A stretch of 64,000 nt of DNA. It comes from Macrostomum lignano (Eukaryota). Position 1 is the first letter of the stretch; each line of letters begins with the position of its first letter. The stretch lies in assembly GCA_002269645.1 (NCBI GenBank), contig NIVC01000038.1, positions 558,001 through 622,000 of the forward strand, read 5' to 3'. Shown piece after piece: positions 1-57,809 of this stretch. The translations under genes and the position numbers were made by a program. The notes under the pieces are model-generated. The model was not told where the DNA came from. It saw nothing but the letters and a program-made list of their open reading frames with translations, and made no database searches.

Positions 1-2582
1 GCGGCCAAGTCTAAAAGCGCCAACTCAAAAGTGGGATCCATATGAGTTGGGCGCTTAAATAGCATGTTCTGTTCTTCGTCTATCGTTAGTGTGTCGGTAT
101 AATGCTTGATAAATAGTTTCTCAGTTTTTCTCGTGATGATGTTTAGGCTGAGTGCCGCGCGAAACAGCTTTTTGGAATTCATTTTTAGTGCTCTGATAAG
201 AACTGTTATGTCTTTATTTTTACTGTTTGTATTACAGCCCTTTAGTATGGACACCAAAGTCATTTTCGCCGCTGACCTGTTGGGAAGTTTAAGCGCCCTT
301 TTCGGCCGATCTAGAAGGCACAATATGTCCGTCATGTCGATTTCTTTTTGAGCATTCTGAACTACATCTAAGACTTGACTTGACTTCTGTTTTTTTTTGT
401 ATTCCTGGACAGCTTGAAGGAGGACGTATAAGTTTCCTCTTTCACTGGCATAGTCAAAGCATGTTTGCCCTGAATGCGATTCGCTCCAGAGACTCAATCC
501 TTTTTCAAGCAGGCAAATTATATTTTCCTGGTGTCCGTAGGCGCAAGCAAAGTGCAAGCAGGTCTCTCCGTGCTGCGAATCGTTGCAAGATTGTAGCTTT
601 ACTTTTTTGTTAAGCAGGGTCACTGGAGAACTTTTCGATAACTTTTCAATACTATCCAACAATGGCTGCTCTAGCATGTACCGACCTGAAAATGTGTGAA
701 TTATGTGAGCGCCAGTCGTTGAATTGACCAAAAGTTTATCGAAGTGACTCCTGGCAGTTTCGTCCACAGCAACTTTATCCAGCAGCTTGCGGAGCACCAG
801 AGCATCCAGCTTTGTTGCGTGCAGGCAGTTCAGACTGAGATTGTTGGTGGCTTCCACATCTACTCCCTTGCTGACGAGCAGCTTGAATCGATTCAAAAGG
901 TGCTGCTCCAAACCAGCATATGTTAATTTGCTCTGCATCAGCGAATGTAGCAAAGTGTTTCCTCCTGCGTCGGTGCGACGGAGCTCATCAGTTGTCATCT
1001 CTTGGATGATTTTGGTAAAGTTCTGTGTCTCGACAGAAGTTTTTTTTGCTGACTCTCCGCCCGAACCAAAATTGTCCATCACGTCGATTGCCAGCTGAAG
1101 CACTGATTGACTTTTGTTATTTCGTCTGCTTAAAGTTCTCTTCATTTCATTTTTATTTTCTGGAAGCATAAACTCTAACAGTTCGCTTTTATCTTTTCTT
1201 TTTGCAGCAATGTGGAAGATTGTGTTGCCCACTTTGTCGGCAGTCTGAAGGTTTTCGACTTTTGTTATCCTCTTAAGCAGCTCTCGAACTGTTTCCAAGC
1301 TGCAATTTTCAACAGCGTAATGAAGAACGGTAGATTGGTGCTTGTTTTTTTCCATGAGACAGTCGGGAAGGTCATTCGACCGACTTTCTGTTTGAGATTG
1401 GTCAGCAGTTTGGTCTTTGTCGCGCTGATTTTGTTCTATGGCGGCTTTTGTGGCGCTTTCTGGGCCCTGAGCCACCGCTGGGTCAGAAGTCTGGTCTTTG
1501 TCGCGCTGACTTTTTTCTACATTTATGGCGGCTTGAACTACTTTCAGAAGCGCAGAATTTTTTTGACCGCTTTCTGGGCGCTGAGCCACTGCTGGGTTAG
1601 CAGTCAGGTCTTTGTCGCTCTTACTTTGTTCTATGGCTTTGACAGCTTCCAGAAGCACTGCATCTCTTCCTGGGCGCTGAGCCAGCGCATGCAGACATGT
1701 GTTGCCCTGCTTGTCCTTTAATTTGTACCAATTCGGCAGCAAATCATCTAAGCGTTTAATAAGTTCGGTTGCTACTTTCTCGTTGTTGTGCTGGAGGGCC
1801 AAGTGTAGAACTGTTTCTCCCAGCTCGTTTGTCTTTTTCAACCAATCTTTTTCGCTCCGTGAAGTCACCTGCAGCAAAAGCTTAATGGCATTTATTTCGT
1901 TTTTAGCTGCGAAATGAGCAATGGTATTGCGATCGATATCTTTTTTGTCAAGTATGTCCTTTGCCTTACCAATTCCGTTAATGATCTCTTTAATAACTTG
2001 CTTTTCGCAATACTGAAGTGCATAGTGCAATACTGTTTCATGTCTGTTGTTTTTCCATTTCCAACAAACTCTTGAAGCGACTTTCTGCACTGTAAGCACC
2101 ATTCGGCATTCATTCTTATTTTGAGTAGCCCAGTGGGCGCAAGTGTTTCCCTTAGCGTCTCTCAACCTAAACAGGGTGACCGTTTTCACCGCTTTGAAAT
2201 TATTTTCCCAAGACTGAGCTGAGTGATAGCGGGCTGACAGATGCAAAGGAGTGACCTTGTCAAGGTCAGAATGCGTGAGGCAGTCTGGTCCGAATTTCTC
2301 GATGAGTTTAGTAAGTGCATCTTCTCCATTCTGATGCATGGCTGCATGATGAGCGGCTGTTCTGCGATTGTCGTCATGTAGCAGTTTCAGATCACCTGAC
2401 GCGGCAGGTTCAGTTCTTAAAATGCCAAGGACGTATTCGAACTCGCCTTTACTTGCAAGTAGAAGCAGCCTCGTGCTTGGATCTTGTTCAACTGCATCTG
2501 TTCTCCATAAACTAAGGGTATTTTTCATAGACAAAACATTTCTAGCTGCGAGCTGGAACTTTGTAGCTGCACTGTCCGCCAT
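1..2582 (-). CDS. Ankyrin-repeat TRP channel, copy 1 (N-terminal ~860 codons; runs off the left window edge)
   Basis: ATG at 2582 (MADSAAT...), aligned to copies 2 and 3. Frame checked by hand at 361-420 (LQAVQEYKKKQK) and 1-60 (FKRPTHMDPTFELALLDLA); both match the ATG frame. It is missing from the ORF track, consistent with no stop inside the window. Splice acceptor TTTGCAG ends at 2623, ~40 nt upstream of the ATG. Confidence 0.9.
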   Translation of the reverse strand, partial: MADSAATKFQLAARNVLSMKNTLSLWRTDAVEQDPSTRLLLLASKGEFEYVLGILRTEPAASGDLKLLHDDNRRTAAHHAAMHQNGEDALTKLIEKFGPDCLTHSDLDKVTPLHLSARYHSAQSWENNFKAVKTVTLFRLRDAKGNTCAHWATQNKNECRMVLTVQKVASRVCWKWKNNRHETVLHYALQYCEKQVIKEIINGIGKAKDILDKKDIDRNTIAHFAAKNEINAIKLLLQVTSRSEKDWLKKTNELGETVLHLALQHNNEKVATELIKRLDDLLPNWYKLKDKQGNTCLHALAQRPGRDAVLLEAVKAIEQSKSDKDLTANPAVAQRPESGQKNSALLKVVQAAINVEKSQRDKDQTSDPAVAQGPESATKAAIEQNQRDKDQTADQSQTESRSNDLPDCLMEKNKHQSTVLHYAVENCSLETVRELLKRITKVENLQTADKVGNTIFHIAAKRKDKSELLEFMLPENKNEMKRTLSRRNNKSQSVLQLAIDVMDNFGSGGESAKKTSVETQNFTKIIQEMTTDELRRTDAGGNTLLHSLMQSKLTYAGLEQHLLNRFKLLVSKGVDVEATNNLSLNCLHATKLDALVLRKLLDKVAVDETARSHFDKLLVNSTTGAHIIHTFSGRYMLEQPLLDSIEKLSKSSPVTLLNKKVKLQSCNDSQHGETCLHFACAYGHQENIICLLEKGLSLWSESHSGQTCFDYASERGNLYVLLQAVQEYKKKQKSSQVLDVVQNAQKEIDMTDILCLLDRPKRALKLPNRSAAKMTLVSILKGCNTNSKNKDITVLIRALKMNSKKLFRAALSLNIITRKTEKLFIKHYTDTLTIDEEQNMLFKRPTHMDPTFELALLDLA

Positions 2583-15425: not shown

Positions 15426-18400
15426 TCATGGATATGTTTTTTGCCTTATTTGCTGCTGCGGCTGCAAAATTTTCAGAACCTCGTCCAGCTTGGATTCAAT
15501 GCTTACAATTCGCTGCTCCTGTCGATCAATTATATCTTCATATTTTTGGTTTCCTTGCATCTTCGCATCGTCCAGCATCTCCTGCAAATCTGCCTTCAAC
15601 TCCGCCACTTCCTTGCCGGTGTGCGCCTTCACCACGTCAAAGTCGTTTCTGTTCCACTCGATGTCGCGCAGCAAGCGGGACCGGCACCGGCGGAACTGAA
15701 TCGCCTGGAACTGCAGGAATCGGTTGTAGTCTTCGGGGTAGTCATTCTTGTCCTGCAGCCACCAAGTGGAGCGTTTCGTCTGAAATACAAAATAAAATAT
15801 TAATTTCTATAGTTATCTAAAAGATCTAATGTCACCCCAAAAATATTCATAACTAATGACGGCTAAATCTTAGTAGTAGCCCAAAGCTAAAGACACCAAT
15901 ACAAAATTAATGACTTGCAACAAAGGGATTTCAAAAATTCACTTACGTCATTCGAGCTTTCGATATTTTCATCATCGACTTCATTTTTCGTGCGAAACCT
16001 TTTAGAACATTTTCTGAATATGAACAAAGCAAATTTGAAAATGTACTCCAAAAAACTAAACGGCGGTGGAAGGAGACTTATATGCTGATACTCCTCCAGC
16101 ATCTGACAGAACTGCCTTCTCCAGACTCCGATCGCAACGCCGTAAATTTGTGTGGCTCGAAAATTGAACAGGGCAATCAGCAAGTTCATCATCACCACAT
16201 TCACCAGGCCCATAAATAGGAATATTATGAGATAGTGAAACCACTCATAGCCTTGCTTGATGGCGACCTTTCCTAGCTCTGTGCTGTCTGGAGAGTAGGT
16301 CAACCCGATCTGATCAAAGTTGCCGAATAGCAAATTCAGAGGTAGCGTCGCAGCTTGAATAAACGTTTCCCATCCATTTCTTAGAGTAGCCAGTTCTTCT
16401 GTAGGCGTCCAGGCGTTAGAAAACAGCAAGCATACAATGAATACTCCAAAAGAGACGAGAATCACGAGCAAGATCGCCAAGAAAGGCAACAAGTCGTAAA
16501 TAAATAAATTCCAAAGCATGTTAATCATTCGTCCAAAGATCTCGAAGTAGCTCAGGAACGAGGTGGATCGAAAGCAGAAAAATGAGTACGACACGCATAG
16601 GATGACCTGAATGGGATAAGCATCTTCCAGCTTAAAGCCCATGCCATAATAGATCCATTTTGCGATAAGACCGGCCAGCAGAAACAGAATCGCCGAACAA
16701 TCGAAAATGTTCAGCCCGTCAACAATGTAGGCAGGAGCAGATACTATGTGAGATCCGATCTTGCAGTTCTCTCTATCTTTTCTTTGTCTCACGATTTCAC
16801 TCACTTCTTGCAAGCCAAACGAAAGAAGATAGGCTGAAAGAATAATATCCGAACTTAGTTGTAAAAAAGTTATGTCAACATTTATAACGTACCAACCAAA
16901 GAATACGAGGAACCCTGCGAATGCGACAAAGTGGATCCAAAACCTTGCTAGTGGAGAAGTCGGTCTCGAAATTTTTGGCCTGCAGCTGCAAGCGCTGGGG
17001 CAGCAGTCGCACGGAAGACAGCAGTTTCCGGATGAACCTTGCTTTGAGCAGTCTGAAATGGGCTGCCTCCACTCCTCTTTGGTAACTGAATAGATGCAGT
17101 CCGTGGCAAACAGATCCAGGTTGTCAGCTTTTTTTACCAGATCAAGCACGCTTCCGTATTCAATTTGCTCTGTTTTTCCTGCTTTCCCGTTTGTTAAGAC
17201 TCGGTACGGAAACTTCGGTCCCAAACAGTTGCGATTTTTCTTCATTGCTGCTGCTTCGCTTTTTTTCGTTTCACTTTTCGAATGCTTCATTTCACCTTTA
17301 ATGTACTTGAACAGCAGCTTGATCTCGGTGCTGTCAGCGTTAATAAACAGCTCATTGAGTGCGTTTACCGCAATGTTTGTTATTTTGCTTTTCAGTTTAA
17401 CCAGCTGTTCATGCTTGCCCTTTGCCTTGGCTCTCATCTTGACAATCTCGGGTTCCAACTGGATGAGCAAGCTGAGGCAGCACGGAATCAGCTCGAACTG
17501 TCGAGTCAGAATCAGATCAGGCAAAATCTCCTCACATTGAAAGAATTCGGCCAAGTCTAGAAGCGCAGACTCAGAAGTGGAATCCACATGGATCCTGTGG
17601 TTCAACATGTTCCATTTTTTAAAATGCATGTGGAATCTTTCGTCCTTCTGTAGTGTGTCAATAAGATACCGAGTAAATAGTGTCTCAGTTTCTCTCGTGA
17701 CGATGTTAAGGCTCAGTGCCGCACGAAACAGCTTTCTGGAGTCCATTTCCAGCGCTTTCATCAGAACCATCTGGTCTGTTCTCTGCTTTCTGTTTTCTGT
17801 ATTCTCCTTTATGTCTTCTCTTTTCTTTGTACTATCGACATTGGTTATGGACACCAGAGTCATTCTCGCTGCTGGCCTGTTGGGAAGTTTAAGCGCTCTT
17901 TTCGGCGGATCCAGAAGGCGCCATATGTCCGCCATCTTAATTTCTTTTTTAGAATTTCCAGTCGCTTCAGGGCTCTGAAAGTTATTATGCTTCTTTTTGT
18001 ATTCACGGACAGCAAGAGTGAGGTCATATAAGTGTCCGTTTTCAAAAGCATAGTCGACGCATGTCTGCCCTGAATGCGATTCATTCCAAAGGCTCAACCC
18101 GTTTTCAAGCAGGAAAATTATATTCGCCTGGTGTCCGACTGCGCAGGCAAAGTGCAAGCACGTCTCTCCGTACTGACAGTCTTTGCAAGATTCTGGATTG
18201 GCTTTCATTTTAATCAGACTGTCTAAAGGACTTTTCGTTATCTTTTCAATACTTTCGATCATTTTCTGATCATCTAGCTTGTACTGACCTGAAAATGTGT
18301 GAATTATGTGTGCGCCGGTCTTTGAATTGACCAAAAGTTTATCGAAGTCACTCCTGGCAGTTTGGTCCGAATGAACTTTATCTAGCAGCTTGCAGAGCAC

Positions 18401-20291
18401 AGGAGCATCCAGTTTTGTTGCGTGCAGGCAGTTAAGATTGAAAATGTTGGTAGCAGTCACATCTACTTGCTTGACAAGCAGCTTGAATCGTTCCAAAATT
18501 TTCTGCTCGACTCCATCAAAGGTGAGTTGGCTCTGCATCAGCGAATGCAGCAAAGTGTTTCCTCTAATGTCGGTGCGGCTGAGCTCTTTCCTCTCTTTAT
18601 CCTCTTTAGGAGTACACGCTTTGATGATGTCCGTAAAGTTCAGTCTCTCTTTAGAGTCCTTTTTGGTGACTTCCGCCCGAACCAAAATTATCCATCATGT
18701 CGATTGCCAGATGAAGCACTGATTGATTTTTGTTATTTCGCATTTTTAAAATTTCATTTCTTTTAACTTCTGGTAGTGGAATCATCTCAAATAATTTTCT
18801 TTTATCTTTTCTTTTTGCGGCAATGTGGAAGATTGTGTTGCCTGCTTCGTCGGCAGTCTGAAGGTTTTCGACTTTTGTTATCTTCTTAAGCAGCTCTCGA
18901 ACTGTTTCCAAGCTGCAATTTTCAACAGCGTAATGCAGAACGGTAGATTGGTGCTTGTTTTTTTCCATGAGACAGTCGGGAAGGTCATTCGACCGACTTT
19001 CTGTTTGAGATTGGTCAGCAGTCTGGCCTTTGTCGCGCTGATTTTGTTCTATGGCGGCTTTTGTGGCGCTTTCTGGGCCCTGAGCCACCGCTGGGTCAGC
19101 AGTCTGGCCTTTGTCGCGCAGACTTTTTTCTACATTTATGGCGGCTTGAACTACTTTCAGAAGCGCTGAATTTTTTTGACCGCTTTCTGGGCGCTGAGCC
19201 GCTGCTGGGTTAGCAGTCTGGTCTTTGTTGCGCTGACTTTTTTCTACATTTATGGCGGCTTTGACTACTTCAGAAGCACTTTCTGCATCTCAGTTCTTTG
19301 TCGCTCTTACTTTGTTCTATGGCTTTGACAGCTTCCAGAAGCACTGCATCTCTTCCTGGGCGCTGAGCCAGCGCATGCAGACATGTGTTGCCCTGCTTGT
19401 CCTTTAATTTGTACCAATTCGGCAGCAAATCTTCTAAGCGTTTAATAAGTTTGGTTGCTACTTTCTCGTTGTTGTGCTGGAGGGCCAAGTGTAGAACCGT
19501 TTCTCCCAGCTCGTTTGTCTTTTTCAACCAATCCTTTTTGCTCCGTGAAGTCACCTGCAGCAAAAGCTTAATGGCATTTATTTCGTTTTTAGCTGCGAAA
19601 TGAGCAATGGTATTGCGATCGATATCTTTTTTGTCGAGTATGTCCTTTGCCTTACCAATTCCGTTCATGATCTCTGTAATAACTTTCTTTTTGCAATACT
19701 GAAGTGCATAGTGCAATACTGTTTCATGTCTGTTGTTTTTCCATTTCCAAAAAACTCTGCACTGCACTCTGCACAAACTCTCTGAATCGACTTTCTGCAC
19801 TGTAAGCACCATTCGGCATTCATTCTTATTTTGAGTAGCCCAGTGGGCGCATGTGTTTCCCTTAGCGTCTTTCAACCTAAATAGGTGACCGTTTTCACCG
19901 CTTTGAAATTATTTTCCCAAGACTGAGCTGAGTGATAGCGGGCTGACAGATGCAAAGGAGTGACCTCGTCAAGGTCAGGACGGATGAGGCAGTCTGGTCC
20001 GAATTTTTTGATGAGTTGAGTAAGTGCATCTTCTCCATTCTGATGCATGGCTGCATGATGAGCGGCTGTTCTGTGATTGTCGTCATGTAGCAGTTTCAGA
20101 TTACCTGGCGCGGCAGGTTCAGTACTTAAAATGCCAAGGACGTATTCGAACTCGGCTTTACTTGCAAGTAGAAGCAGCCTCGTGCTTGGATCTTGTTCAA
20201 TTGCATCTGTTCTCCATAAACTAAGGGTCTTTTTCATAGACAAAACATTTCTAGCTGCGCGCTTGAACTTTGTAGCTGCACTGTCCGCCAT
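15426..20291 (-). pseudogene. Ankyrin-repeat TRP channel, copy 2; exons 20291-15947 and 15779-15426; three frameshifts (or assembly indels)
   Basis: Split over ORFs 19872-20444, 19270-19875, 18651-19088 and 15887-18685. Breaks at ~19885, ~19270-19300 and ~18672; the first and last are 1-nt deletions relative to copy 1. Phase-0 intron 15780-15946 (GAC|GTAAGT...TTTCAG|ACG) joins to the YPEDYNRFLQFQ...coiled-coil exon. Confidence 0.88.
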
Positions 20292-21224: not shown

Positions 21225-21255
<31 letters not shown>

Positions 21256-36909: not shown

Positions 36910-39900
36910 TGTGATGTCTATGGTATTGAATACGAGCTATTTATTTTGACTCTTGCAGTTCACTAACTCTGTTACTTTCTAAAACAAGACTGCGCATTTT
37001 CTTACGGCTACGAGCCGGATTCAACTATACAATCGTATGCACTTTTATCTGTCAAACCTGACAAACCTATTCGGACCCATTTCGACACAACAAATTCCGA
37101 CGAGGACGACAATGGAAACTTTTAACTGCAGCAATCCGCGCAGCTGGGTACGAAGACTCGAATTTTACCTGGCGGCAAACAAAATTACGGATTAGGCGCT
37201 AAATAAAGCTAATCTGCTCACGTTGATTGGTGAGGAAGCATTCTCAATATTACGGAATTCAATCGCTCCTCAGAAGTGCAAGGACAAGACCTACGATGAG
37301 CTACTTAAAGCGCTCAAATCTCAATTTGTGCCCACAATGAGTTCGATTGCACAAAGATTTGTGTTTGCTCAACGGAAGTAAAGGGATGGTGAAACAGTGG
37401 CCGAATTCGTGGTAAGTCTACGAAGCCTCAGTGCAAGCTGTAATTGCGACACCTTCTTGGATCAGGCGCCTTTTGTTTGTCCGAATAGGTTTGTCATTTA
37501 GACGCCTTTGTTTTCGGTCTCCGAGACGAGCAAATGCTGAACAGACTGCTTACATCATTAGAAGAAAAGTCTTCATTTAAGGACGCAGTTGAAGCAGCTC
37601 AGGTGATTGAAAATGCGTGCAAAAATGCACGAAGCATTCAAGGCCTTGCAAGCGATGTGAAGAGATTGGACACAAGAAAAGTGAAGCCTCAGACACATAA
37701 GCCATCCACATTTCGAGGCCCTACTGGAACTGCTCCATTTCCATTTAAGTTGCGCCCAACAAATAAGTCAGCAAATCAACGGAAGTGCTATCGGTGTTCC
37801 GCTATGGACCACTTGGCAAACGCTTGTCCGCACTGCAACAAACAATGCAAGAAGTGCGGTAAGGTAGGCCATTTGGGAATAGCTTGCAGATCAACAGTAC
37901 CATCAAATGGATTTCATAATAAGCAAATCGTAGAAATCACACCTGGTGAACTAAGCAGCAACCGTTCAGATTCGCCACCCAGTATCAACAGATTGTCTGG
38001 TGGAAAGGCACGTGGCTACTTTTTAGATATGAAGAAGATAAATGGTACTACTGTCCATCTGGAAATTGATACTGGAGCCGAACGAACAATCCTGACTAAG
38101 GAAACTGCAGAAAGACTGGGATTAAAGCTAAAGCCCAGCAATACCCACCTCCGACACTACTTGGGGGGAGAAATTGAAGTATTTGATGAATGTATGGTCA
38201 CTGCCGAATACATAGATCAGAAGAAGCAGCTTCCGATACTGGTCTGGAAAAGGATCGAATTTGCTTGGTCGAGACTGGATGGGCAAGGATGGATTGAAGC
38301 TAAACTGAAATGAGATTTTAAACAATTTAGAAGATATTAGAAAGGTTGTTACCAATCAAGAAAAAAATGATCTGGTTGAAATCCTCAGCAACTATTCTGA
38401 CGTGTTTAAATAAGACATCGGAAAGATATCAGGAGTGAAAGCAGTTGTGAAAATAAAAGAAGCAAGTCAGCCGGTTTTCTGCAAAGCTCGCACCATGCCT
38501 TTTGCAATGAAGCCACTTGTTGAAGCTGAACTTGATCGCCTAGAAAAGCAAGGTGTTATTCACCCCGTCACGCATTCTGACTGGGCCACTCCGATTGTAC
38601 CGGTGCTAAAGCCTGACGGTACATCAGTGAGGATTTGCGCCGACTTTAAAACAACCCTGAACAAAGTTCTACTTGTCGATCAGTACCCTCTACCGAGATA
38701 GGAAGACCTCTTTAGTGCTTTGAATGGAGGGAAATATTTTATTAAACTGGATGCGACACAAGCCTTTCTACAGCTGGAGCTTGATGAAGATTCCAAGCAG
38801 TACATGGTACTCAATACACACAAAGGACTATACCAGTGTCAGCGGTTGCAATATGGCTTGGCAAGCGGACCTGCTGTATTTCAACTGGCTGTGGACAAGA
38901 TGCTACAGGGATTGAATGGGGTCATTTGCTTTATTGAGGATGTCCTTGTGGTTGGCAAGAACTCCGAAGAACATTTGAACAACCTGCGAGCTGTACTACA
39001 ACGTTTCCGAGAACGTGGCGTGAGACTAAAGCAATCTAAATGTAAGTTTATGCAGCAATCAGTCACATTCCTTGGATACAGAATGGATGAAAATGGAATC
39101 CATCCCACTGGAGACAAAGTTAGGGCGATTCGGGATGCACCGAGACCTGAAAATATTTCTGAATTGAGAGCCTGGATTGGGCTGGTAAATTACTATGGGA
39201 AGTTCATCCAAAACCTAGCTACGTTAATGCACCCATTCTATAAGAGATTGCGCAAAGAAGCCGATTTTGATTGGTCGAACGATTGTGAGTCTGCCTTTAG
39301 TGAAATAAAGGACCAACTCATTTCGAGCAAGGTACTGATGCGCTATCACCCGTCGAAGAAGCTGAAGTTAGAGTGTGATGTTTCACCCTACGGTCTTGGA
39401 GCTGTGATCTCGCATGAAACGCCGACTGGGGATAGACCGATTGCATATGCATCAAGAACTCTGTCGTCGGCTTGAAAGACTTACGCCCAGATAAAAAAAG
39501 AGGCTCTCGCGATAATTTTTGGTCTAAAGAAATTTAATGAGTATTTGTTTGGTCGATCATTCACGCTGGTGGATCACAAACCTCTCATAGCGATATTTGA
39601 TCCACAAAGACCGATTCCACCTGTAGCAGCCAGTCGATTGCAAAGATGGGCCATGCTCCTTGGTGCGCACTCGTACGACATAAAGTTCAGAAAAACTGAC
39701 CATCACTGCAATGCTGATGGGCGATCAAGGCTCCCGGAAAAGAGTGAGGACAATAACGAAACAACCTCGAGCTTGGTTCAGCAAGTCTTAATTAGCAGAC
39801 TTCCAGTGCAAGCTAACGTCATCGCAGAAGAACCTTGAAGGACCAAATTCTCAAGAAAGTACTGATTTTATCCAGGCAAGGATGGCCAGATTCCGCCACT

Positions 39901-41314
39901 GAAATCGAAGCTAGTTTGAGGCCGTACTATGAAAAGAGACATGAGCTTGGCATAGAGTCAGGTGCACTGTTGCTAGGAATGCGAGTAATTGTTCCACAAG
40001 TTTTGCAGCGTTTGGTTCTTGAAGAGTTTCATGAAGGTCATCCAGGTATGGTTCTTACCAAGTCAAGGGCCAGGATGTACTGCTGGTGGCCACAGATAGA
40101 CAGGGACATTGAAGACAGTGTGAGCAACTGCCGAGGGTGCCGACTACAGCGTTCAAATCCACCGGAAGCACCTCTCAGTCCATTTTCGTGGCCAACTACT
40201 CCTTGGACAAGAATTCATGTAGACTATATGGGACCATTCAGGTCGTGGATGTTTCTAGTTGTTGTTGATGCGACTAGTAAGTTTGCGGAGGTGATACCCT
40301 GAAAAATGCAACATCTGAAAGCACGATTCGATCATTGAGAGAAATATTTGCAAGATTTGGTTTACCACGAGTGCTTCATTCTGACAATGGTTCTCTATTC
40401 ACGTCATATAAATTTAAGGATTTTTAAAGACAAAATGGTATTCGACACTCTTTGAGTAGTCCTGCTCACCCAATGTCAAATGGATTGGCTGAAAATATGG
40501 TAAAGCAAGTAAAAAAGGCTTTAAAAGCATCAGGCGAAGGCGACATACTAAAGCAGCTAGCAAACTTCATGTTCCGGGCCAGAGCTACACCTCACAGCAC
40601 AACTGGAAAGACTCCATCGGAACTTCTTTTTGGTAGAAATCTGAGAACAAAACTGTCGTTGCTCTTTCCCGATGCGGAATCAAAGGTCTTGTGCGCCCAA
40701 GACAAACAAAAAGAGCGACATGACACTAAACGAACGGCGTCAGTGGACTTTTTCGTTGGAGAGAGAGTTCTGGTTCAGGATTTACGAGGAGGAAAAGACA
40801 GATGGGCTCTTGGAACTATTCTGAGACGCACAGCCCCGTTGACTTACTCTGTTCGAGTTGGTGATTTACTTTGGAAACGTCACGCGGATCAGCTTCTGAA
40901 GACAGGACAACGACTACAAGAGACTATTGAGCCAAAGCTGATATGGAATGATTCTAAAGTTCTGCTGAGACAAAACAAGATGCTTCACAGTTTACAGAAA
41001 AGGCTGGTAGAAATTTCGGTCAACTACCTGAGAAGTTTGAAACCGACCAGCGACCTGCACCTGGTTACAATCTCCGGAACAGAGCATTGTTAAAAATGCC
41101 AACACGTTACAATTCAGGAAAGGGAGGGGTGTGATGTCCATGGTATTGAATGCAAGCTATTTTATTTTGACGCTTGCAGTTCACTAATTCTGATACTTTC
41201 TAAAAGCAAGACTGCGCATTTTCTTACGGCTACGAGCCGGATTCAACTATACAATCGTATGCACTTTTATCTGTCAAACCTGACAAACCTATTCGGACCC
41301 ACTTCGACACAACA
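36910..41314 (+). mobile_element. Full-length degenerate Gypsy LTR retrotransposon
   Basis: LTRs 36910-37092 and 41130-41314 (TGT...ACA; 7 substitutions and 2 indels by hand). TSD TGAAC at 36905-36909 and 41315-41319. PPT aggaaagggagggg. Gag with two CCHC knuckles, protease LEIDTGA, RT (motif decayed to FIED), RNase H LECDVSPYGLG, integrase H..H/C..C. Many stops and frameshifts. Confidence 0.95.
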
Positions 41315-42484
41315 TGAACCAAACATGCTTACTACTTTCTTCCGTTGTTTGTTGGTGACGGCTTCAATGCAGATATCCTCTCTCCATCACAGCGCACAGT
41401 TCTTTTGTGAGCTCTATTGATTCGCAATATGGTATTTGCTTTCATCAATGTTAGCTCACTATACCCTCTAGCATTTTCCATGGTTCCAGGATCCCGAAGT
41501 GTCCCATGACTATCCGGTCTCTATGCAACGTTAGCAGACGTCAATGCTACACGTAAGCTACCTTTTGTACAAATTCGGCGAAACCTTATAACGAGTACAT
41601 GGTATGCGTGTCTACATCAGTCCTTTTCCTTTTCGTTTTCCTTTCGAAATCAACTGCTAAGTAGCTTTTTGATAATAATTTGCAGCAGAATTAGGCCAAG
41701 CATACATTCTACCAGTTGGTTGCTAACTTAACTTAACTTAACGTAAGTTAACTTACCTGTTGGTTGCCGCATGCCAAAATAAACAAATAAAAACTGATTG
41801 ACTCTGAAAAACTGATTAGAAATTTTTCGTATATTTAAAGGAATAATTTAACATCTGTAGCTATCTCTAAAGCTTCAAACTGCTGCGAAAACTATTTTTA
41901 AAATGGTAAACTACGGAACAGTACCAGCTGTTATTTAGAAAATTATACTCGTATAAGTAATAGAGTCTACAATTATCAAGTTCCAAAACAAATATATTGT
42001 AATTTAAAATATGTGGTTAATTCCTAAGGCTCATAGTGCCAAAACTTCATGTGATCACAAGAAGCGTATATATATTGATACCAAGCTACATGATTTACCC
42101 CTACCGTTAGTGGTTCTGAGTACGGTTGACATTCATGAAACGCTCACATAAAATCACAATAGAAATAAATGTGTAAAAAAATTAGAAACCACAGCAAACA
42201 TAATATTATTTATAGCTATTTTAGATATCATCATGCGCATGCTCATTTGACACATTGACATTAAATTTAAATTAATCTAAATTGATTAAAACTAACAATC
42301 AAAACTATTGTTGGTTTTGATTAAACATAGTATATAATAAGACATTTAGTATAGGTGGATTATAGTAAAATAGATTGAGTGAGTTTAGAAAAGTTTTAGA
42401 GATTTAAAGCGTCTTTTTGACGAAAAACAAACGCAATAAGTGTACATATGCTAATCCTACTATGATAGAAGGCAAATTAAGATA

Positions 42485-43617: not shown

Positions 43618-46600
43618 TTATTTTTTTTGCGGCTTAGAAAGTTTCAAAAGCTGGTCCAGCTTGGATTCAATGTTTGAACTTCGTTGCTCCTGTCGATTCA
43701 TTCTATCTTCAATTTTTTGGTATTGTTGCTTCAGCTCTGTAAACACAGTCTCACTGCTGTTCGTCTCTTGCTGCTTTTTCGAAGGCAGATTCGGTTCCAC
43801 AGATACATTTTCTTCATATACTTGCGTCTCCTTTTGGAGCCCGCGATAGCTTACCTTTCCTTGGCCTTGAGTATTCGCATCGTCCAGCATCTCTTGTAAT
43901 TCCGCTTTCAACTCCGACAATTCTTTGCCCGTGTGCGCCTTCACCACGTCGAAGTCGTTTCTGTTCCACTCGGTGTCGAGCAGCAGGCGGGACCGGCACC
44001 GGCGGAACTGTATCGCCTGGAACTTTAGGAACCGGTTGTACTCTTCAGGGTAGTCCTCCGTGTCGTTCGGCCACCTAGAGGCTTTCTGAAATACAATTTT
44101 TTTCATAATAGTATATATGTTATTTAACAAATCACGTTTACCCACAGAAATAGAGCTGATGGCAGCTAAAAATCGAATTAGTGGTCCAAAATCTGCATTC
44201 AGCTTTGATCCCATTTTATACGAGCGTAATAACGACGCACATACAAAATATATGACTTACAACAAACAGATTTCGAAAAGCCACTTACGTCATCAGTGAC
44301 TGCATTTTTCGGGCAAAACTTTTTCATTAGGAAATTGTAAATGTACTCCAGAAAACTCAATGGCGGTGGAAATTGAGTCAGCTCCTGATACTCATCTAAC
44401 ATCTGGAAAAACCGCTTTCTCCAGACGCCGATCGCCACGCCATAAATTTGTGTGACTCGCAAATTAAACAATGCAATCAGCAAGTTCATCATCACAACAT
44501 TCACCAGGCCCATGAATAAGAATATTACGAAATAGTTAAACCATTCATAGCCTTGCTTGATGGCGACTTTTCCTAGCTCCGTGCTATCTGGAGAGTAGCT
44601 CAACTCGATCTGATCGAAGTTGCCGAACAGCAAGTTGAAAGGTAGCGTGGCAGCTTGAATAAACGTTTCCCATCCATTGCTTAGAGTAGCGATTTCTTCT
44701 GTAGGAGTCCAAGCGTTAGAAAACAGCAGGCATACAAAGAATACTCCAAAACAGCAGAAAATCACGAACAAGACCACCAGGAAAGGCAACAAGTCGTATA
44801 CAATTAGATTCCAAAGCATGTTAATCATTGGCCCAATTGTCTCGAAGTACGTCAGGAACGTGACAGATCGAAAGCAGAACAGTGAGTACGACACGCACAG
44901 GACAACTTGACTGGGATAAGCATCCTGCAGCTGAAAGCCCATCCCATAATATAACCATCTTGCAACAAGGCCGGTGAGCAGAAGCAGAATCGCCAGAGCA
45001 TCGAAAATGTTGAGTCCGTCAACAATGTAGGCGGGAACAGATCGTACATGAGAACCGATCTTGCAGTTCTCTCTAGCTTTTCGTAGTCTCCAGATTTCAC
45101 TCGCTTCTTGCAAGCCAAAGGAAAAAAGATAGGCAACAAGAAGAATGTCCCACTTTGGTTCTAAGAAACTTTCCTCGAAATTTATAACGTACCAACCAAA
45201 GAATACGAGGAACCCTACGAATGCGACAAAGTGGGTCCAAAACCTTGCCAGTGGAGAATCCGGTCTCGAAATTTTTGGCCTGCAGCTGCAAGCGCTGTGG
45301 CAACAGTCGCACGGAAGACAGCTTCCGGATAAACCTCGTTTTGAGCAGTCTGAAATGGGCTTCCTCCACTCTTCTTTGATAACTGAGTAGATGCAGTCGG
45401 TGGCATACAGATCCGGGTTGTCAGCTTTTTTCACCAGTTCTAGCACGCTTCCGTATTGAATTTTCCCTTCTTTAAAGTCTCGGTACGGAAACTTCGGTCC
45501 CAAGCAGTCGCGATTTTTCTTCATTGCTGCTGCTTCGCTATTTAAAGCCAAATTTTCTTTATGCTTCATTTCACCTTTGATGTACTTTGACAGCAGCTGG
45601 AACTCGATGATGTTAGCGTTAAGAAATAGCTCATTGAGTGCGTTTACTGCAATGTTCGTGATCTTGCTTTTCACTTGAAGCAGCTGCTCATGCTTGCCCT
45701 TTGCCTTGGCTCTCATCTTGATGATCTCGGGTTCCAACTGGATGAGCAAGCTGAGGCAGCACGGAATCAGCTCGAACTGTCGAGTCAGAATCAGGTCAGG
45801 CAGGATCTCATCACGATGAAAGAATGTGGCCAAGTCTAGAAGCGCCAACTCAGAATTGGAATCCACATGAGTCAGGTGCTTGAACGTGTTCAGTCTGGGA
45901 AAAGCTCTCTGGAATTCTTCGTCGTTCGTTACTGTGTCAATGAAATACTGCGTAAATTGCCTCTCGGTTTCTCTCGTGATGATTTCCAGGCTGAGTGCCG
46001 CGCGAAACAGTTTTTTGGAGTTCCATTCCAGCGTTTTAGTCAGAACTATCTTGTCTTTTTTTTGCTGGTTTGTACTGTAGTGATTGGTTATGGACACCAG
46101 AGTCATTCGCGCTGCTGACCTGTTGGAAAGTTTAAGCGCTCTTCTTGGCGGATCCAGAAGGCGCCATACGTCCGTCATTTTAATTTGTTTCTGAACATTT
46201 GGTAACATCCCGGAGCCTGTTTCGTTATTCTTTTTATTTTGAGAGGTACATGTATCAGAGCTTGAATCTTCATTCGGTTTCTTGTTGTATTTCTTCATAG
46301 CCTGACGGAAGTCAAAAAAGTTTCCGCTTTCAATGGCATAGTCAACGCATGTCTGTCCTGAATGCGATTTGCTCCAGAGACTCAATCCTTTTTCAAGCAA
46401 GAAAATTATATTTTCCTGATGTCCGTAAGCACAGGCAAAGTGCAAGCAGGTCTCTCCGTGATGCGAGTTCTTGCAAGATTGTAACTGGACTTTTTTTTTA
46501 AGCAGGCTGTTTGTAGTACTTTCCGATATATTTTCGATACTTTTTAACATAGGCTGATCTAGCTTGTACTGACCTGAAAATGTGTGAATTATGTGAGCAC

Positions 46601-48242
46601 CAGTCTTTGAATTGACCAAGAGTTTATCGAAGTAACTCCTGGCAGTTTTGTCCGAATGAACTTTATCTAGCAGCTTGCAGAGCACAAGAGCATCCAGCTT
46701 TGTTGCGTGCAGGCAGTTTAGACTGAGATTGTTGGTGGCTTCCACATCCACTCCCTCGCTGACGAGCAGCGTGAATCGATCCAAAATGTGCTGCTCAAAA
46801 CCGTCATATGTTAATTTGCTCTGCATCAGCGAATGTAGCAAAGTATTTCCTTCTATGTCTGTGCGGCTGAGATCCTCCTTTGTCATCTCTTTGATAATGT
46901 TCTTAATGTTCAGTTTCACTGAAGAAGTCTCTTCAGTGACGTCGATTGCCAGATGAAGCACCGATTGGTTTTTGTTATTTCGTTTGTTTAAAGCTTTCTT
47001 TATGTCAACTCCTTCACGAAATAACATCGTCTCTAAAAGTTCACTTTTATCTGTTCTTTGTGCAGCGATGTGGAAGATTGTATTGCCCTCTTTGTCGGCA
47101 ATCTGAAGGCTTTGGCCTTCTTTGATCATGTTAAGCAGCTCTCGAACAGTTTCCAATCTGCAATTTTCAACAGCGTAGTGAAGAACGGTGGATTTTTGCT
47201 TGTTCTCATCCATGAGAAAGTCCAGTTCAGTCGGTGGACTCTGGCTCTCAGGTGGGTTAGCAGTCAGACCTTTGTCGCGCTGACAAATGGCGGCTTTAAC
47301 AGCTTTCAGAAGTACAGCGTCTCTTTCAGGGTGCTGAGCCGCCGCATGCAGACATGTGTTGCCCTGCTCGTCTTTCAGTTTGTACCAATTTGGCAGTTTT
47401 TGTTCGTTTAATTTTTCAATAAGTTCGGTTGCTACTTCCTCGTTGTTGTGCTGAAGGGCCAAGTGTAGAACCGTTTCTCCCAGCTTGTTTTTAGATTTTA
47501 ACCAATGATATTCGCTCTGTGTTGGAGCCTTTATCTGTTGCACGGATTTAATGGCATCGATTTCTAGCAGCAAAATGCTAGAATTTTTAGCAGCAAAATG
47601 AGCCATGGTATTGCCTTGCATATCTTCCTCGCCAAGTATGTCTTTTAAATTACCAATTTCTTTCATGATCTCCTCAATAACATCATTTTTGCAATACTGA
47701 AACACACGGTGCAATACTGTTTCATTTCTATTGTTTTTCCATTTCAAGCAAGCTGTTGAAGCTATTTTTTTTACTGTAAGCATCATTTTGTAGTCTTTAG
47801 AGTTTTGAGCTGCCCAGTGAGCGCAAGTGTCTCCGTTAGCGTCTCTTAACCTAAATAGGTTGACCGTTTTCACAGCATTGAAGTTCTGTTCCCAAGACTG
47901 AGCTGAGTGATAGCGCGCTGACAGATGCAGCGGAGTGATTTCGATAATATCAGGACTTGTGAGGCAGTCTGTTCCGAATATCTGGATGAGTTCAGTGAGT
48001 TGAGTTTCTCCATCGTTCTCCATGGCTGCATAATGAGCGGCTGTTTTGCCATTGTCGTCAGATAGCAGCTCCAGATTATTTGGAGCCCTTTTTAAAATAG
48101 CTACGGCATTGGCGAATTCATCTTTATTTTCAGATTCAAGCAGCTCCTTGTTTGGATGTCGAATCGGATTTATTCCCCAAGTACTAATGGTCCTTTTCAA
48201 AGGCCTTTTAGATTTCTTGTTATCTTTAGAATCGTCCGCCAT
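43618..48242 (-). CDS. Ankyrin-repeat TRP cation channel, copy 3, intact (~1473 aa); exons 48242-44289 and 44085-43618
   Basis: 1347-aa ORF with ~15 ankyrin repeats, pre-S1 GSVLELVKKAD..LYATDCIYSVIKEEW, 6 TM segments, pore PFNLLFGNFD, S6 MMNLLIALF, TRP-box-like VWRKRF..LDEY...PPPLS. Phase-0 intron 44086-44288 (GAC|GTAAGT...TTTCAG|AAA) joins to a coiled-coil exon. Confidence 0.93.
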
Positions 48243-57674: not shown

Positions 57675-57809
57675 TATTTTGCTGGATGCGCGATCTTTGC
57701 TCAATAATTGATCGATTTTAATATTAGTTAATGAGCTGAAAAGATTTCATTTGGTTCAATAGTTGGATTATTGTTAGACTATGAGATAATTACAACCACA
57801 ATTTACAAG

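What the first reader, a model, noticed from the sequence alone, without database searches (positions are those of the whole stretch)
43618..48242. Triplicated TRP channel with ~15 ankyrin repeats on a TRPM-like core
Seen: about 15 ankyrin repeats precede a helical region ending GSVLELVKKAD..LYATDCIYSVIKEEW, then S1 SPLARFW, S3 YIVDGLNIFD..AI, S4-S5 IGPMINM, pore PFNLLFG, a post-S6 W...LDEY...PPPLS motif and a C-terminal coiled coil. Established: canonical TRPM channels have MHR/SLOG N-termini without ankyrins; TRPA has 14-18 ankyrins but lacks this TRP-box/proline motif; TRPC has 4 and TRPN about 29. Inference: the domain mix fits no standard family cleanly. It may be a domain-shuffled or relict ankyrin-bearing TRPM-like lineage, locally amplified to at least 3 diverging paralogues.
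Basis: partly seen in the sequence, partly recalled or inferred. Interest (0 to 1): 0.75.

Follow-up and report, generated by a model that had tools for sequence, protein, structure and literature searches.

The report
Flatworm ankyrin-bearing TRPM-like channel genes
Three tandem genes of the flatworm Macrostomum lignano encode TRPM-type cation channels whose usual nucleotide-binding head is replaced by about 15 ankyrin repeats; a shorter-ankyrin version of this design is already known from parasitic flatworms as the meclonazepam target TRPM_MCLZ, so these genes are a new long-ankyrin branch, not a new family.

Summary
The window is Macrostomum lignano DNA. It carries three same-strand tandem paralogues:
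- Copy C (43618-48242) is intact.
- Copy B (15429-20291) is frame-disrupted here, but intact at a 96.7%-identical second locus.
- Copy A (1-2582) runs off the window.

Copy C has two exons and encodes 1473 aa. In order these are about 15 ankyrin repeats, a helical linker, S1-S6, a TRP helix with PPPL, and long C-terminal helices.

The core is clearly TRPM. All 60 listed PDB matches are TRPM, both by sequence and by profile, as are all 50 listed Foldseek matches. The linker is a degenerate MHR3/4 region. There is no SLOG/MHR1-2.

The interpretation that it fits no family is out of date. SLOG-less, ankyrin-bearing "TRPM-like" channels were described in parasitic flatworms from 2023 to 2026 as TRPM_MCLZ (Smp_333650).

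The window's genes are not TRPM_MCLZ orthologues. They belong to a separate long-ankyrin subfamily (9-27 repeats, about 30 clusters at 50% identity). That subfamily is almost exclusive to M. lignano and I found no description of it.

They share with the TRPM_MCLZ group:
- a clan in my tree (89% NJ bootstrap);
- two extra-membrane motifs, absent from all 52 and 46 SLOG-TRPMs scored.

Whether the clan is derived or a relict could not be tested, because I had no outgroup. Function is inferred only.

The parts
43618..48242 (-). Copy C, the complete gene. Exon 1 is 48242-44289, the intron 44288-44086, exon 2 44085-43618 including the stop. The product is 1473 aa.
   Evidence: The junction is confirmed by public model P0001, which maps as 45908-44289 then 44085-43852.
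46287..48059 (-). Ankyrin array, aa 62-652, about 15 repeats. The middle part alternates two repeat types (GNT.AH.AA.N and ETVLH.A.Q), which suggests growth by duplication of two-repeat units.
   Evidence: Pfam Ank families, E down to 2.6e-29. Motif scan. jackhmmer coverage equal to 14.9 repeat lengths.
45273..46286 (-). Helical linker, aa 653-990, a degenerate MHR3/4-like region. It contains the clan motif QFELIP (aa 822), the pre-S1 motif GSVLELVKKADNPDLYATDCIYSVIKEEW (aa 931) and a Cys-rich insert CLPCDCCHSACSC (aa 975).
   Evidence: hhalign, long-ANK linker against short-ANK linker: 95.9%, E=6.4e-9, 195 columns. Short-ANK against SLOG-TRPM MHR3/4: 99.9%, E=1.9e-31. Long-ANK against SLOG-TRPM: 85%, E=6.2e-6. 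The PDB profile alignment starts in TRPM MHR3/4.
44334..45272 (-). S1-S6, pore and TRP helix, aa 991-1303. Residues at TRPM positions: S2 E1046 and E1049, S3 N1078 and D1081, S4 R1125, filter F1206-G1207-N1208 with D1210, S6 MMNLLIALFN, TRP W1274 and E1287, PPPL at 1292.
   Evidence: phmmer against PDB: TRPM3, TRPM2, TRPM1 and TRPM7 at E 1e-17 to 1e-14, aligned from pre-S1 to PPPL. Residue alignment.
44086..44288 (-). The only intron, 203 nt, phase 0, GTAAGT...TTTCAG.
   Evidence: A P0003-type gene model places a junction at the same protein position in copy B, mapping as 15944 then 15779.
43618..44085 (-). C-terminal cytoplasmic helices, aa 1319-1473. They contain the clan motif FLKFQAIQFR (aa 1337) and heptad-like helices that could form a coiled coil.
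   Evidence: AlphaFold2 predicts a long helix at model residues 748-809, at low confidence. In the profile, which is built from long- and short-ankyrin sequences, the profile columns for this region align with the C-terminal helices of Nematostella TRPM2.
15429..20291 (-). Copy B, 52-69% aa identical to C. The reading frame is broken in this window: -1 nt at 19886, +73 nt at 19301, and a net +13 nt near 18671-18590. The C-terminal 932-aa ORF 15887-18685 is intact.
   Evidence: The homeologous or allelic locus L001 (GCA_002269645.1 NIVC01000143.1, 96.7% nt identity) has an uninterrupted 1488-aa ORF.
1..2582 (-). Copy A, N-terminal part only: start codon near 2582, ankyrin array and start of the linker. 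The rest of the gene lies beyond the start of the window. It is in frame throughout the visible part.
   Evidence: tblastn: query aa 15-805 match 2528-3 in one frame at 56% identity. Frame-1 translation. The N-terminal part plus 5 kb upstream (1454-7233) is 91% identical to 19181-24924 of the copy B unit; the rest is only 79%.

Best explanation
The locus is a tandem cluster of three paralogous genes of Macrostomum lignano. They encode subunits of tetrameric cation channels of the TRPM lineage.

In these channels about 15 canonical ankyrin repeats take the place of the N-terminal SLOG/MHR1-2 nucleotide-binding module. The rest of the TRPM chassis is kept:
- a degenerate MHR3/4 helical linker;
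- the pre-S1 motif;
- S1-S4 and the pore, with an F-G-N filter;
- the TRP helix with PPPL;
- C-terminal helices.

The genes belong to a flatworm clan of SLOG-less, ankyrin-bearing 'TRPM-like' channels. The described member of that clan is the meclonazepam target TRPM_MCLZ. Within the clan the window's genes form a separate long-ankyrin subfamily (9-27 repeats) that has expanded to dozens of paralogues in M. lignano.

Shown: architecture, homology, copy structure, and the intactness of copy C.

Inferred:
1. The product is a non-selective cation channel.
2. Gating probably involves the retained TRPM-type Ca2+ site in S2/S3 and the TRP helix (E1046, E1049, N1078, D1081, E1287).
3. The ankyrin array serves as a cytoplasmic docking, tether or sensor module in place of nucleotide sensing.
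4. The fast-evolving, locally duplicating family is used for sensory diversification.

The more parsimonious history is replacement of SLOG by ankyrin repeats in a flatworm ancestor, not survival of a pre-SLOG lineage. This was not tested with a rooted tree.
For: Organism and gene model. 99-100% identity to a UniRef M. lignano protein, with the same splice junction.

TRPM core.
- phmmer against PDB: all 60 listed hits are TRPM; the best are TRPM3 and TRPM2 at about 1e-17.
- Profile A2 against PDB: all 60 listed hits are TRPM, E 4.8e-75 to 7.5e-52. The alignment runs from MHR3/4 to the C-terminal helices.
- Foldseek on the AF2 model: all 50 listed hits are TRPM, E about 1e-12.

No SLOG. Pfam and jackhmmer find none in copy C or in any family member.

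Linker homology. hhalign gives 95.9% to the short-ANK linker, and the short-ANK linker is 99.9% to TRPM MHR3/4. The M. lignano short-ANK relatives carry a partial Pfam PF25508 'TRPM2-like domain' plus Ank and no LSDAT.

Family size. HMMER against 1.84 billion representatives gives about 30 hits with E<1e-30 and about 40 with E<1e-20, followed by SLOG-TRPMs. The exceptions are one environmental contig and Opisthorchis.

Clan.
- NJ tree of S1-TRP (117 taxa, 283 columns, 200 bootstraps): every ANK-bearing SLOG-less sequence separates from every SLOG-TRPM at 89%. The long-ANK subfamily gets 96-100% and the parasite clade 82%.
- The linker motif QF[DE]xIP occurs in 30/37 long-ANK, 14/28 short-ANK and 0/52 SLOG-TRPMs.
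- The post-TRP motif FLxFQAxxFR occurs in 27/30, 16/25 and 0/46.

The parasite clade is TRPM_MCLZ. The published pocket residues H827, H831, Y864, E868, R943 and [H/Y/F]946 are reproduced with exactly the same spacing in the Dicrocoelium and Schistocephalus members. The duplicated channel exon is seen in Opisthorchis, as reported in PMC12861061.

Intact and constrained. Copy C has no stop codon and keeps conserved pore, S6 and TRP residues. dN/dS between copies is 0.36 in the TM region and 0.47-0.59 overall.
Against: - Scored against group HMMs of the TM region, the long-ANK sequences score higher with the broad SLOG-TRPM model (about 141-172 bits) than with the narrow TRPM_MCLZ model (93-140) or the M. 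lignano short-ANK model (77-126). The TM region alone therefore shows no special affinity, and the 89% NJ split could owe something to long-branch attraction.
- The sister relation of the long-ANK subfamily to the TRPM_MCLZ clade has only 28% support.
- The tree is distance-based and unrooted. It contains no TRPS, TRPC, TRPN or TRPA references.
- The direct long-ANK linker to TRPM MHR3/4 match is modest: 85%, 116 columns, part of them pre-S1/S1. Pfam PF25508 does not hit copy C.
- The AF2 model is of low confidence (mean pLDDT 57, pTM 0.46).
- dN/dS of 0.4-0.6 is high for a conserved channel, and one of the three copies is frame-broken in this window.
- I examined no expression or functional data.
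Confidence: 0.8

Rival explanations
1. Relict lineage. The ankyrin-bearing clan branched off before the TRPM/TRPS ancestor acquired SLOG. It keeps the ancestral ankyrin N-terminus of group-1 TRP channels, which would make it a separate TRP family surviving only in flatworms.
For: All ANK-bearing sequences fall on one side of a split from all SLOG-TRPMs, at 89%. MHR3/4 is itself reported to contain degenerate ankyrin repeats, and ankyrins are thought to have been lost before the TRPM-TRPS split (PMC13143021, PMC7306681). An ANK-plus-MHR3/4 ancestor is therefore conceivable. The large TRPM phylogenies I searched never mention platyhelminths. 'Platyhelminth', 'Macrostomum' and 'Schmidtea' are absent from the text of PMC7306681. 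'Flatworm', 'Platyhelminth' and 'Macrostomum' are absent from the text of PMC13143021, and its supplements hold no Schistosoma, Macrostomum, Schmidtea or Platyhelminthes.
Against: Every named member of the clan is a flatworm. SLOG-TRPMs already exist in choanoflagellates and across animals, so a relict would require loss in every other sampled lineage. The TM region scores very well against a general SLOG-TRPM model, as expected for a derived TRPM. [quoted passage not shown]
Confidence: 0.1
2. The genes are ordinary TRPA- or TRPN-type (ANKTM/NOMPC-like) channels, or TRPC channels, whose membrane core only superficially resembles TRPM.
For: An array of 9-27 ankyrin repeats is typical of TRPA (14-18) and TRPN (about 29). 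TRPC also has a proline-rich motif after the TRP box; that point rests on my own knowledge.
Against: No TRPA, TRPN, TRPC or TRPV chain appears among the 60 listed PDB sequence hits. Only 69 chains matched at E<=10. None appears among the 60 listed profile hits or the 50 listed Foldseek hits. The pre-S1 motif, the linker and the C-terminal helices align to TRPM-specific regions.
Confidence: 0.02
3. The locus is a decaying cluster of non-functional duplicates, pseudogenes or dead retrocopies, and the long ORF of copy C is a recent survivor without function.
For: The gene is nearly intronless. dN/dS is 0.4-0.6. Copy B is frame-broken in this window. The region is full of transposon remnants and satellites.
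Against: Copy C has a 1318-codon exon with no stop. The copy-B-type gene is an intact 1488-codon ORF at the second locus. An independent environmental contig carries an uninterrupted 1537-aa homologue. Pore, S6, TRP and Ca2+-site residues are conserved across paralogues that share only 32-43% identity. dN/dS is below 1 in all regions.
Confidence: 0.08

Closest known systems
TRPM_MCLZ (Schistosoma mansoni Smp_333650) and its orthologues, the 'TRPM-like' group of parasitic flatworms (PMC10788528, PMC11731825, PMC12861061)
   Same: - N-terminal ankyrin repeats in place of SLOG/MHR1-2.
- TRPM-type MHR3/4-like linker, S1-S6, and TRP helix with PPPL.
- Few exons: 3 in S. mansoni, 2 here.
- Shared linker motif QF[DE]xIP and post-TRP motif FLxxQ[AS]xxxR, both absent from SLOG-TRPMs.
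- Same side of the 89% split in the TM tree.
   Different: - About 15 repeats (family range 9-27) against about 5-6.
- The linker is so divergent that Pfam PF25508 no longer detects it.
- It is a separate clade, not an orthologue: 96-100% bootstrap for the subfamily, and only 28% for sisterhood with the parasite clade.
- The ligand-pocket residues are only partly kept. H827, E868 and R943 equivalents are present; H831 becomes F, Y864 becomes F, and H946 becomes T.
- M. lignano also has short-ankyrin genes (P0043, P0044, P0053) that keep the pocket pattern better and look like the true TRPM_MCLZ co-orthologues.
Canonical TRPM channels (TRPM1-8, nvTRPM2)
   Same: Best and only PDB relatives for the TM domain, TRP helix, pre-S1 and C-terminal helices. 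S3 N/D, S2 E and TRP-helix E lie at the positions of the TRPM2/4/5/8 Ca2+ site (the site definition is from my own knowledge of those structures).
   Different: No SLOG/MHR1-2. No NUDT9H or kinase domain. Canonical ankyrin repeats at the N-terminus. The filter is FGN instead of FGQ or FGE. The TRP box reads WRKRF instead of WKFQR.
NOMPC/TRPN and TRPA1
   Same: A long N-terminal array of canonical ankyrin repeats in front of a six-helix TRP channel. Family members with 22-27 repeats approach the 29 of NOMPC.
   Different: The membrane core and linker are not TRPN- or TRPA-like. The resemblance is one of architecture only, and any spring or tether function is speculation.

Membership tests
TRPM (canonical melastatin family) | TRPM-type S1-S6, pore and TRP helix | tested here: met
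   Only TRPM chains are listed. phmmer gives E about 1e-17 and the profile gives E down to 4.8e-75.
TRPM (canonical melastatin family) | N-terminal MHR1/2 = SLOG (Pfam LSDAT_euk) | tested here: not met
   No LSDAT_euk or LSDAT_prok hit at E<=0.1. jackhmmer seeded with a TRPM SLOG finds it in the SLOG-TRPMs of the set but in no long- or short-ANK protein.
TRPM (canonical melastatin family) | MHR3/MHR4 helical region before S1 | tested here: inconclusive
   The direct hhalign match to TRPM MHR3/4 is only 85%, E=6.2e-6. It is convincing by transitivity through the short-ANK relatives (95.9%, then 99.9%). Pfam PF25508 does not hit copy C.
TRPM (canonical melastatin family) | C-terminal tetramerising coiled coil (Pfam TRPM_tetra) | tested here: inconclusive
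   No PF16519 hit. A long helix is predicted at low pLDDT. The clan profile aligns to the nvTRPM2 C-terminal helices. I ran no coiled-coil predictor.
Flatworm ankyrin-bearing 'TRPM-like' clan (type: TRPM_MCLZ) | Ankyrin repeats at the N-terminus and no SLOG, on a TRPM core | tested here: met
.
Flatworm ankyrin-bearing 'TRPM-like' clan (type: TRPM_MCLZ) | TM region groups with TRPM_MCLZ-type sequences and apart from SLOG-TRPMs | tested here: inconclusive
   The NJ bipartition has 89% support. However, group-HMM scores do not favour the TRPM_MCLZ models, and the tree is unrooted and distance-based.
Flatworm ankyrin-bearing 'TRPM-like' clan (type: TRPM_MCLZ) | Shared extra-membrane motifs: linker QF[DE]xIP and post-TRP FLxFQAxxFR. 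I defined these two motifs here; they are not published criteria. | tested here: met
   Both are present in copy C (aa 822 and 1337). Census: 30/37 and 27/30 in long-ANK, 14/28 and 16/25 in short-ANK, 0/52 and 0/46 in SLOG-TRPMs.
TRPM_MCLZ orthologue group (Smp_333650) | Conserved VSLD pocket residues H827, H831, Y864, E868, R943, [H/Y/F]946 and Y1117 (PMC12861061) | tested here: not met
   Copy C has H, F, F, E, R and T at the aligned positions. I did not assess the Y1117 equivalent. Dicrocoelium and Schistocephalus members match the pattern and spacing exactly.
TRPM_MCLZ orthologue group (Smp_333650) | Falls inside the orthologue clade | tested here: not met
   The long-ANK subfamily is its own clade (96-100%). 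The parasite clade is separate (82%).
TRPA / TRPN | TRPA- or TRPN-type membrane core behind the long ankyrin array | tested here: not met
   No TRPA1 or NOMPC chain among the listed PDB sequence, profile or Foldseek hits.
TRPC | TRPC-type core with four ankyrin repeats and an EWKFAR TRP box | tested here: not met
   No TRPC chain among the listed hits. There are about 15 repeats. The TRP box reads VWRKRF.
TRPS (soromelastatin) | SLOG plus Nudix domains, and sister position to TRPM | tested here: not met
   No SLOG or Nudix domain.
TRPS (soromelastatin) | Phylogenetic position relative to labelled TRPS sequences | not testable with these tools
   I could not obtain labelled TRPS sequences. No text supplements are held for PMC7306681.

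The most novel reading that the evidence does not exclude
The flatworm ankyrin-bearing clan, comprising TRPM_MCLZ, the M. lignano short-ankyrin genes and this long-ankyrin subfamily, is not a derived TRPM. It is a surviving branch that split off before SLOG was fused to the TRPM/TRPS ancestor. It would therefore preserve the ancestral ankyrin-plus-MHR3/4 N-terminus and would deserve the rank of a separate group-1 TRP family. Its long-ankyrin members would have converged on a NOMPC-like tethered design.
Probability: 0.1. Interest if true: 0.85.

Novelty: new variant of a known kind. Interest (0 to 1): 0.5.

Why it matters
Reviews and large phylogenies describe TRPM and TRPS as the ankyrin-free group-1 TRP families (PMC7306681). 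I found no sign that those studies sampled platyhelminths.

The parasitology literature has recently described one exception, TRPM_MCLZ, which is an anthelmintic target. This locus shows that the exception is the tip of a much larger radiation in flatworms.

A free-living, laboratory-tractable species carries dozens of such channels. They include a subfamily with ankyrin arrays as long as those of TRPA1 and NOMPC on a TRPM chassis.

This gives three things:
1. A natural experiment on swapping the cytoplasmic sensor module of a TRP channel.
2. Free-living relatives for studying the evolution of a drug target and the variation in its VSLD pocket.
3. A candidate sensory receptor family in Macrostomum.

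It does not overturn the TRP classification unless a rooted tree supports the relict reading.

Tried and rejected
1. Word-indexed homologue searches were nearly useless here. They returned 8, 6 and 3 proteins. The exhaustive HMMER search was what revealed the family.

2. Two metagenome scans, one with the family alignment and one with the environmental homologue P0027, found nothing. So I could not recover the 5.1-kb contig or identify its organism.

3. I looked for outgroup and TRPS sequences in paper supplements. None are held for PMC12861061 or PMC7306681. The PMC13143021 tables contain no flatworms. The derived-or-relict question therefore stays untested.

4. My first ad hoc ankyrin HMM undercounted, giving 5 repeats in copy C. 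I replaced it with jackhmmer coverage.

5. Scoring the TM region against group HMMs did not favour the TRPM_MCLZ group. I report this as a caveat rather than as support.

6. The AF2 model, built on a 10-sequence alignment, reached only pLDDT 57. I use the Foldseek result only as agreement with the sequence evidence, not as evidence about the linker fold.

7. I considered a second intron after 'GQGK' (GTAAGC at about 43852), as public model P0001 implies. No in-phase acceptor was evident, and model P0002 reads through the equivalent stretch. I left it as coding.

8. I considered and rejected a TRPA, TRPN or TRPC identity and a gene-model chimera. The ankyrin and channel parts lie in one uninterrupted ORF in three independent sequences.

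Full report
**What is in the window.** The window is eukaryotic DNA from the free-living flatworm Macrostomum lignano. The protein encoded at 43618-48242 is 99-100% identical to a UniRef M. lignano model. On the minus strand a 1347-aa ORF (44199-48242) is followed, in another frame, by a 198-aa ORF (43618-44214). A GTAAGT donor after codon 1318 and a TTTCAG acceptor define a 203-nt phase-0 intron (44288-44086). Splicing gives a 1473-aa protein. Public model P0001 maps with exactly this junction.

**Ankyrin repeats.** Pfam finds only ankyrin families in the protein: Ank_2 2.6e-29, Ank_4 2.6e-26, Ank 3.3e-23. A motif scan finds 12 canonical repeat cores between aa 65 and 630. Three more degenerate repeats, read by eye, bring the count to about 15. 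jackhmmer coverage of aa 62-652 equals 14.9 repeat lengths. The middle repeats alternate between two types (GNT.AH.AA.N and ETVLH.A.Q). This suggests the array grew by duplication of two-repeat units, which is an inference.

**The channel core is TRPM.**
- phmmer of aa 651-1347 against all PDB chains lists only TRPM proteins among its 60 best hits. TRPM3, TRPM2, TRPM1 and TRPM7 score E 1e-17 to 1e-14. The alignment runs from just before S1 to the PPPL after the TRP helix. Only 69 chains matched at E<=10.
- A profile of the wider clan (A2) hits TRPMs at E 4.8e-75 to 7.5e-52. All 60 listed hits are again TRPM. The alignments begin in MHR3/4 and end in the C-terminal helices.
- An AlphaFold2 model of aa 585-1425 is of low confidence (pLDDT 57, pTM 0.46). 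Its 50 best Foldseek matches in the PDB are nevertheless all TRPM, E about 1e-12, TM-score about 0.4. I take this only as agreement with the sequence evidence.
- No TRPA, TRPN, TRPC or TRPV chain appears in any of these lists.

**Residues in the core.** Copy C keeps S2 E1046 and E1049, S3 N1078 and D1081, and TRP-helix E1287. These lie at the positions that form the Ca2+ site of TRPM2, 4, 5 and 8 (my own knowledge of those structures, aligned). It also keeps S4 R1125, a pore helix with an F-G-N filter and D1210, the S6 motif MMNLLIALFN, and TRP W1274.

**The region between ankyrins and S1.**
- There is no SLOG/MHR1-2. Pfam LSDAT models do not hit. A jackhmmer search seeded with a TRPM SLOG finds the domain in the ordinary TRPMs of my set but in none of the ankyrin-bearing proteins.
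- The 340-aa helical linker is a degenerate MHR3/4.
- hhalign of the long-ankyrin family linker against the linker of short-ankyrin relatives gives 95.9% probability (E=6.4e-9, 195 columns).
- The short-ankyrin linker matches the MHR3/4 of SLOG-TRPMs at 99.9% (E=1.9e-31).
- The direct long-ankyrin to TRPM comparison gives 85% (E=6.2e-6).

**Three copies.** tblastn and self-blastn show three copies on the same strand.
- Copy A (start codon near 2582) runs off the start of the window after about 840 codons and is in frame throughout.
- Copy C is complete and intact.
- Copy B (15429-20291) has an intact 932-codon ORF from the last ankyrins to beyond the TRP helix. Its N-terminal half changes frame at three places.
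- A second M. lignano locus (GCA_002269645.1, NIVC01000143.1; L001) is 96.7% identical to the copy B unit and carries an uninterrupted 1488-codon ORF.
- Against that ORF the window's copy B has -1 nt at 19886, +73 nt at 19301, and a net +13 nt around 18671-18590. This copy is either a pseudogene or mis-assembled.
- The duplicated units include the spacers. Window 12672-14781 matches 36145-42034, where the copy C unit is interrupted by an LTR-retrotransposon pol region (37.5-41.1 kb).
- The A and B units are 91% identical over the N-terminal ankyrins plus 5 kb upstream but only 79% over the rest. This is a mosaic that points to gene conversion or a later partial duplication.
- Pairwise dN/dS is 0.36 in the TM region (B against C) and 0.47-0.59 overall. 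That is below 1 but high for a channel.

**The family.**
- An exhaustive HMMER search of 1.84 billion representative proteins used aa 690-1473, the part without ankyrins. It gave about 30 hits at E<1e-30 and about 40 at E<1e-20. Ordinary TRPMs follow at about 25% identity over the membrane part only.
- Of the 20 family clusters I looked up, 16 are named M. lignano proteins, 1175-1988 aa long.
- In the jackhmmer domain map the full-length members carry 9-27 ankyrin repeats.
- One exception is P0027, a 1537-aa uninterrupted homologue on a 5.1-kb contig binned as a 'Kangiellaceae' MAG. It is clearly eukaryotic DNA from an unidentified marine organism.
- The other exceptions are Opisthorchis proteins.
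- The best non-family hits include shorter proteins with 5-6 ankyrin repeats, a partial Pfam 'TRPM2-like domain' (PF25508, the MHR3/4 region), an ion-transport domain and no SLOG. They come from M. lignano, the trematode Dicrocoelium and the cestode Schistocephalus.

**What is already published.** The literature search shows that this architecture has been described.
- Schistosome TRPM_MCLZ (Smp_333650), the target of meclonazepam, is a TRPM-subfamily channel encoded by three exons. It 'lacks the NH2-terminal MHR1/2 or SLOG domain' and instead has ankyrin repeats (PMC10788528, PMC11731825).
- Sixty-three orthologues are catalogued in trematodes, monogeneans and cestodes. The group is called 'TRPM-like' because of its N-terminal ankyrin repeat domains (PMC12861061).
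- The parasite sequences in my set are these orthologues. The published pocket residues H827, H831, Y864, E868, R943 and [H/Y/F]946 are reproduced with identical spacing (4, 33, 4, 75, 3) in the Dicrocoelium and Schistocephalus proteins. Position 946 holds Y in the fluke and F in the cestode, as reported for Fasciola and Echinococcus.
- The Opisthorchis model contains the duplicated channel exon that the paper describes.
- By contrast, the large TRPM/TRPS phylogenies state that TRPM and TRPS lack ankyrin repeats. I found no mention of platyhelminths in them.
- I found no paper describing the long-ankyrin subfamily or its expansion in Macrostomum.

**Relationship to TRPM_MCLZ.**
- I built a neighbour-joining tree of S1-TRP with 117 sequences, 283 columns and 200 bootstraps. 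It separates every ankyrin-bearing, SLOG-less sequence from every SLOG-TRPM at 89%.
- Within that clan the long-ankyrin subfamily gets 96-100%, the M. lignano short-ankyrin group 100%, and the parasite TRPM_MCLZ group 82%. These are three distinct clades. Their order is unresolved, with 28% for long-ankyrin plus parasite.
- Two motifs outside the membrane domain support the clan independently. The linker motif QF[DE]xIP occurs in 30/37 long-, 14/28 short- and 0/52 SLOG-proteins. The post-TRP motif FLxFQAxxFR occurs in 27/30, 16/25 and 0/46.
- Against this, the long-ankyrin TM regions score higher with a broad SLOG-TRPM HMM than with the narrow TRPM_MCLZ or short-ankyrin HMMs. The comparison is unequal, but it warns that the TM region alone gives no special affinity.
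- Copy C keeps only part of the TRPM_MCLZ pocket: H, F, F, E, R and T at the six S1-S4 positions. It is not an orthologue. The M. lignano short-ankyrin genes, which keep H/H/F/E/R/Y, are better candidates for that role.

**How it probably works.** All of this is inferred. The product should assemble as a tetrameric cation channel built like a TRPM. The MHR3/4-like linker and the TRP helix would couple the cytoplasmic part to the gate, and the S2/S3/TRP acidic cluster could bind Ca2+. The ankyrin array sits where TRPMs carry the nucleotide-binding SLOG ring. It would then replace ligand sensing by protein docking, tethering or some other input. Local duplication, a family of dozens of paralogues and elevated dN/dS are the pattern expected of a diversifying sensory receptor family. 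Relaxed constraint is the alternative reading.

**Derived or relict.** Every named clan member is a flatworm, and SLOG-TRPMs predate animals. Replacement of SLOG by ankyrins in a flatworm ancestor is therefore more parsimonious than survival of a pre-SLOG lineage. My tree is unrooted and lacks TRPS and other outgroups, so this is not tested.

**Verdict.** The genes are real, the core is TRPM-like, and the ankyrin array is real. The 'no family fits' claim is superseded by the TRPM_MCLZ literature. The finding is a new, long-ankyrin, strongly expanded variant of that known kind in a free-living flatworm.

Noticed in passing
window 37534-41093 (+): Pol region of an LTR retrotransposon: zinc-knuckle/protease-like ORF, RVT_1, RNase H and integrase-like ORFs. 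It lies in the spacer downstream of copy C. The homologous spacer downstream of copy B (13731-14781) lacks it, so the insertion appears to post-date the duplication.
   Followed up: partly
window 31973-32503 (+) and 35163-35501 (+): An integrase C-terminal fragment with a chromodomain (Pfam Chromo, 2.1e-4) and an adenovirus-type cysteine protease (Peptidase_C5, 1e-4), with unassigned ORFs between them. This looks like the remnant of a Maverick/Polinton-like element.
   Followed up: partly
window 27173-29029 and 29623-31477: An inverted duplication of about 1.86 kb at 96% identity, with arms about 600 bp apart, directly upstream of the Maverick-like ORFs.
   Followed up: no
window 9868-11562, 52976-54015 and 54622-54875: Satellite arrays at 91-95% identity between and within loci. 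The blastn offsets suggest a period that is a multiple of 28 nt, but I did not measure it. The arrays give long spurious ORFs in several frames (PASQILSCWASLPDPQLLGQPPRSSVAG...). One lies downstream of copy A and the others downstream of copy C.
   Followed up: no
window 56688-57704 (-): An exon of a CD36-family (scavenger receptor/SNMP-like) gene, Pfam CD36 at 2.2e-79. Upstream of it are low-complexity CVCLSV repeats.
   Followed up: partly
window 61584-63995 (-): An 803-aa ORF, apparently alpha-helical and repetitive (recurring LxxYQxQL, 'AEAEQRKL'), with no Pfam hit. It may be a coiled-coil protein exon.
   Followed up: no
copy C aa 965-990 (window about 45273-45350): A Cys-rich insert, CSKRGLSGSCLPCDCCHSACSC, immediately before S1. 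It is conserved in copies B and C and in P0003, and it is variable in more distant paralogues. It could be a palmitoylation or metal-binding cluster next to the membrane.
   Followed up: no
database proteins P0070 (1708 aa) and P0094 (1781 aa): Two TRPMs of unknown organism in which jackhmmer finds 3-4 ankyrin repeats N-terminal to a normal SLOG + MHR3/4 + TM arrangement. If they are from flatworms, they could be an intermediate on the way to replacement of SLOG. In the NJ tree they sit on the SLOG side, in a 90% clade with P0141, P0085 and P0104.
   Followed up: partly
database protein P0027/P0172 (5106-bp contig, 'Kangiellaceae bacterium' MAG, MEE4247282.1): An uninterrupted 1537-aa long-ankyrin TRPM-like gene deposited as a bacterial MAG protein. 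It is almost certainly eukaryotic contamination of the bin. It is the only long-ankyrin family member found that is not attributed to M. lignano.
   Followed up: partly
L001 (GCA_002269645.1 NIVC01000143.1, 433289-455211) against window 12366-24850: A second locus 93-98% identical to the copy B unit and its flanks, with the gene intact. This fits the duplicated (homeologous or allelic) genome of M. lignano. The deposited gene model there covers only the last 575 aa of a 1488-codon ORF.
   Followed up: yes
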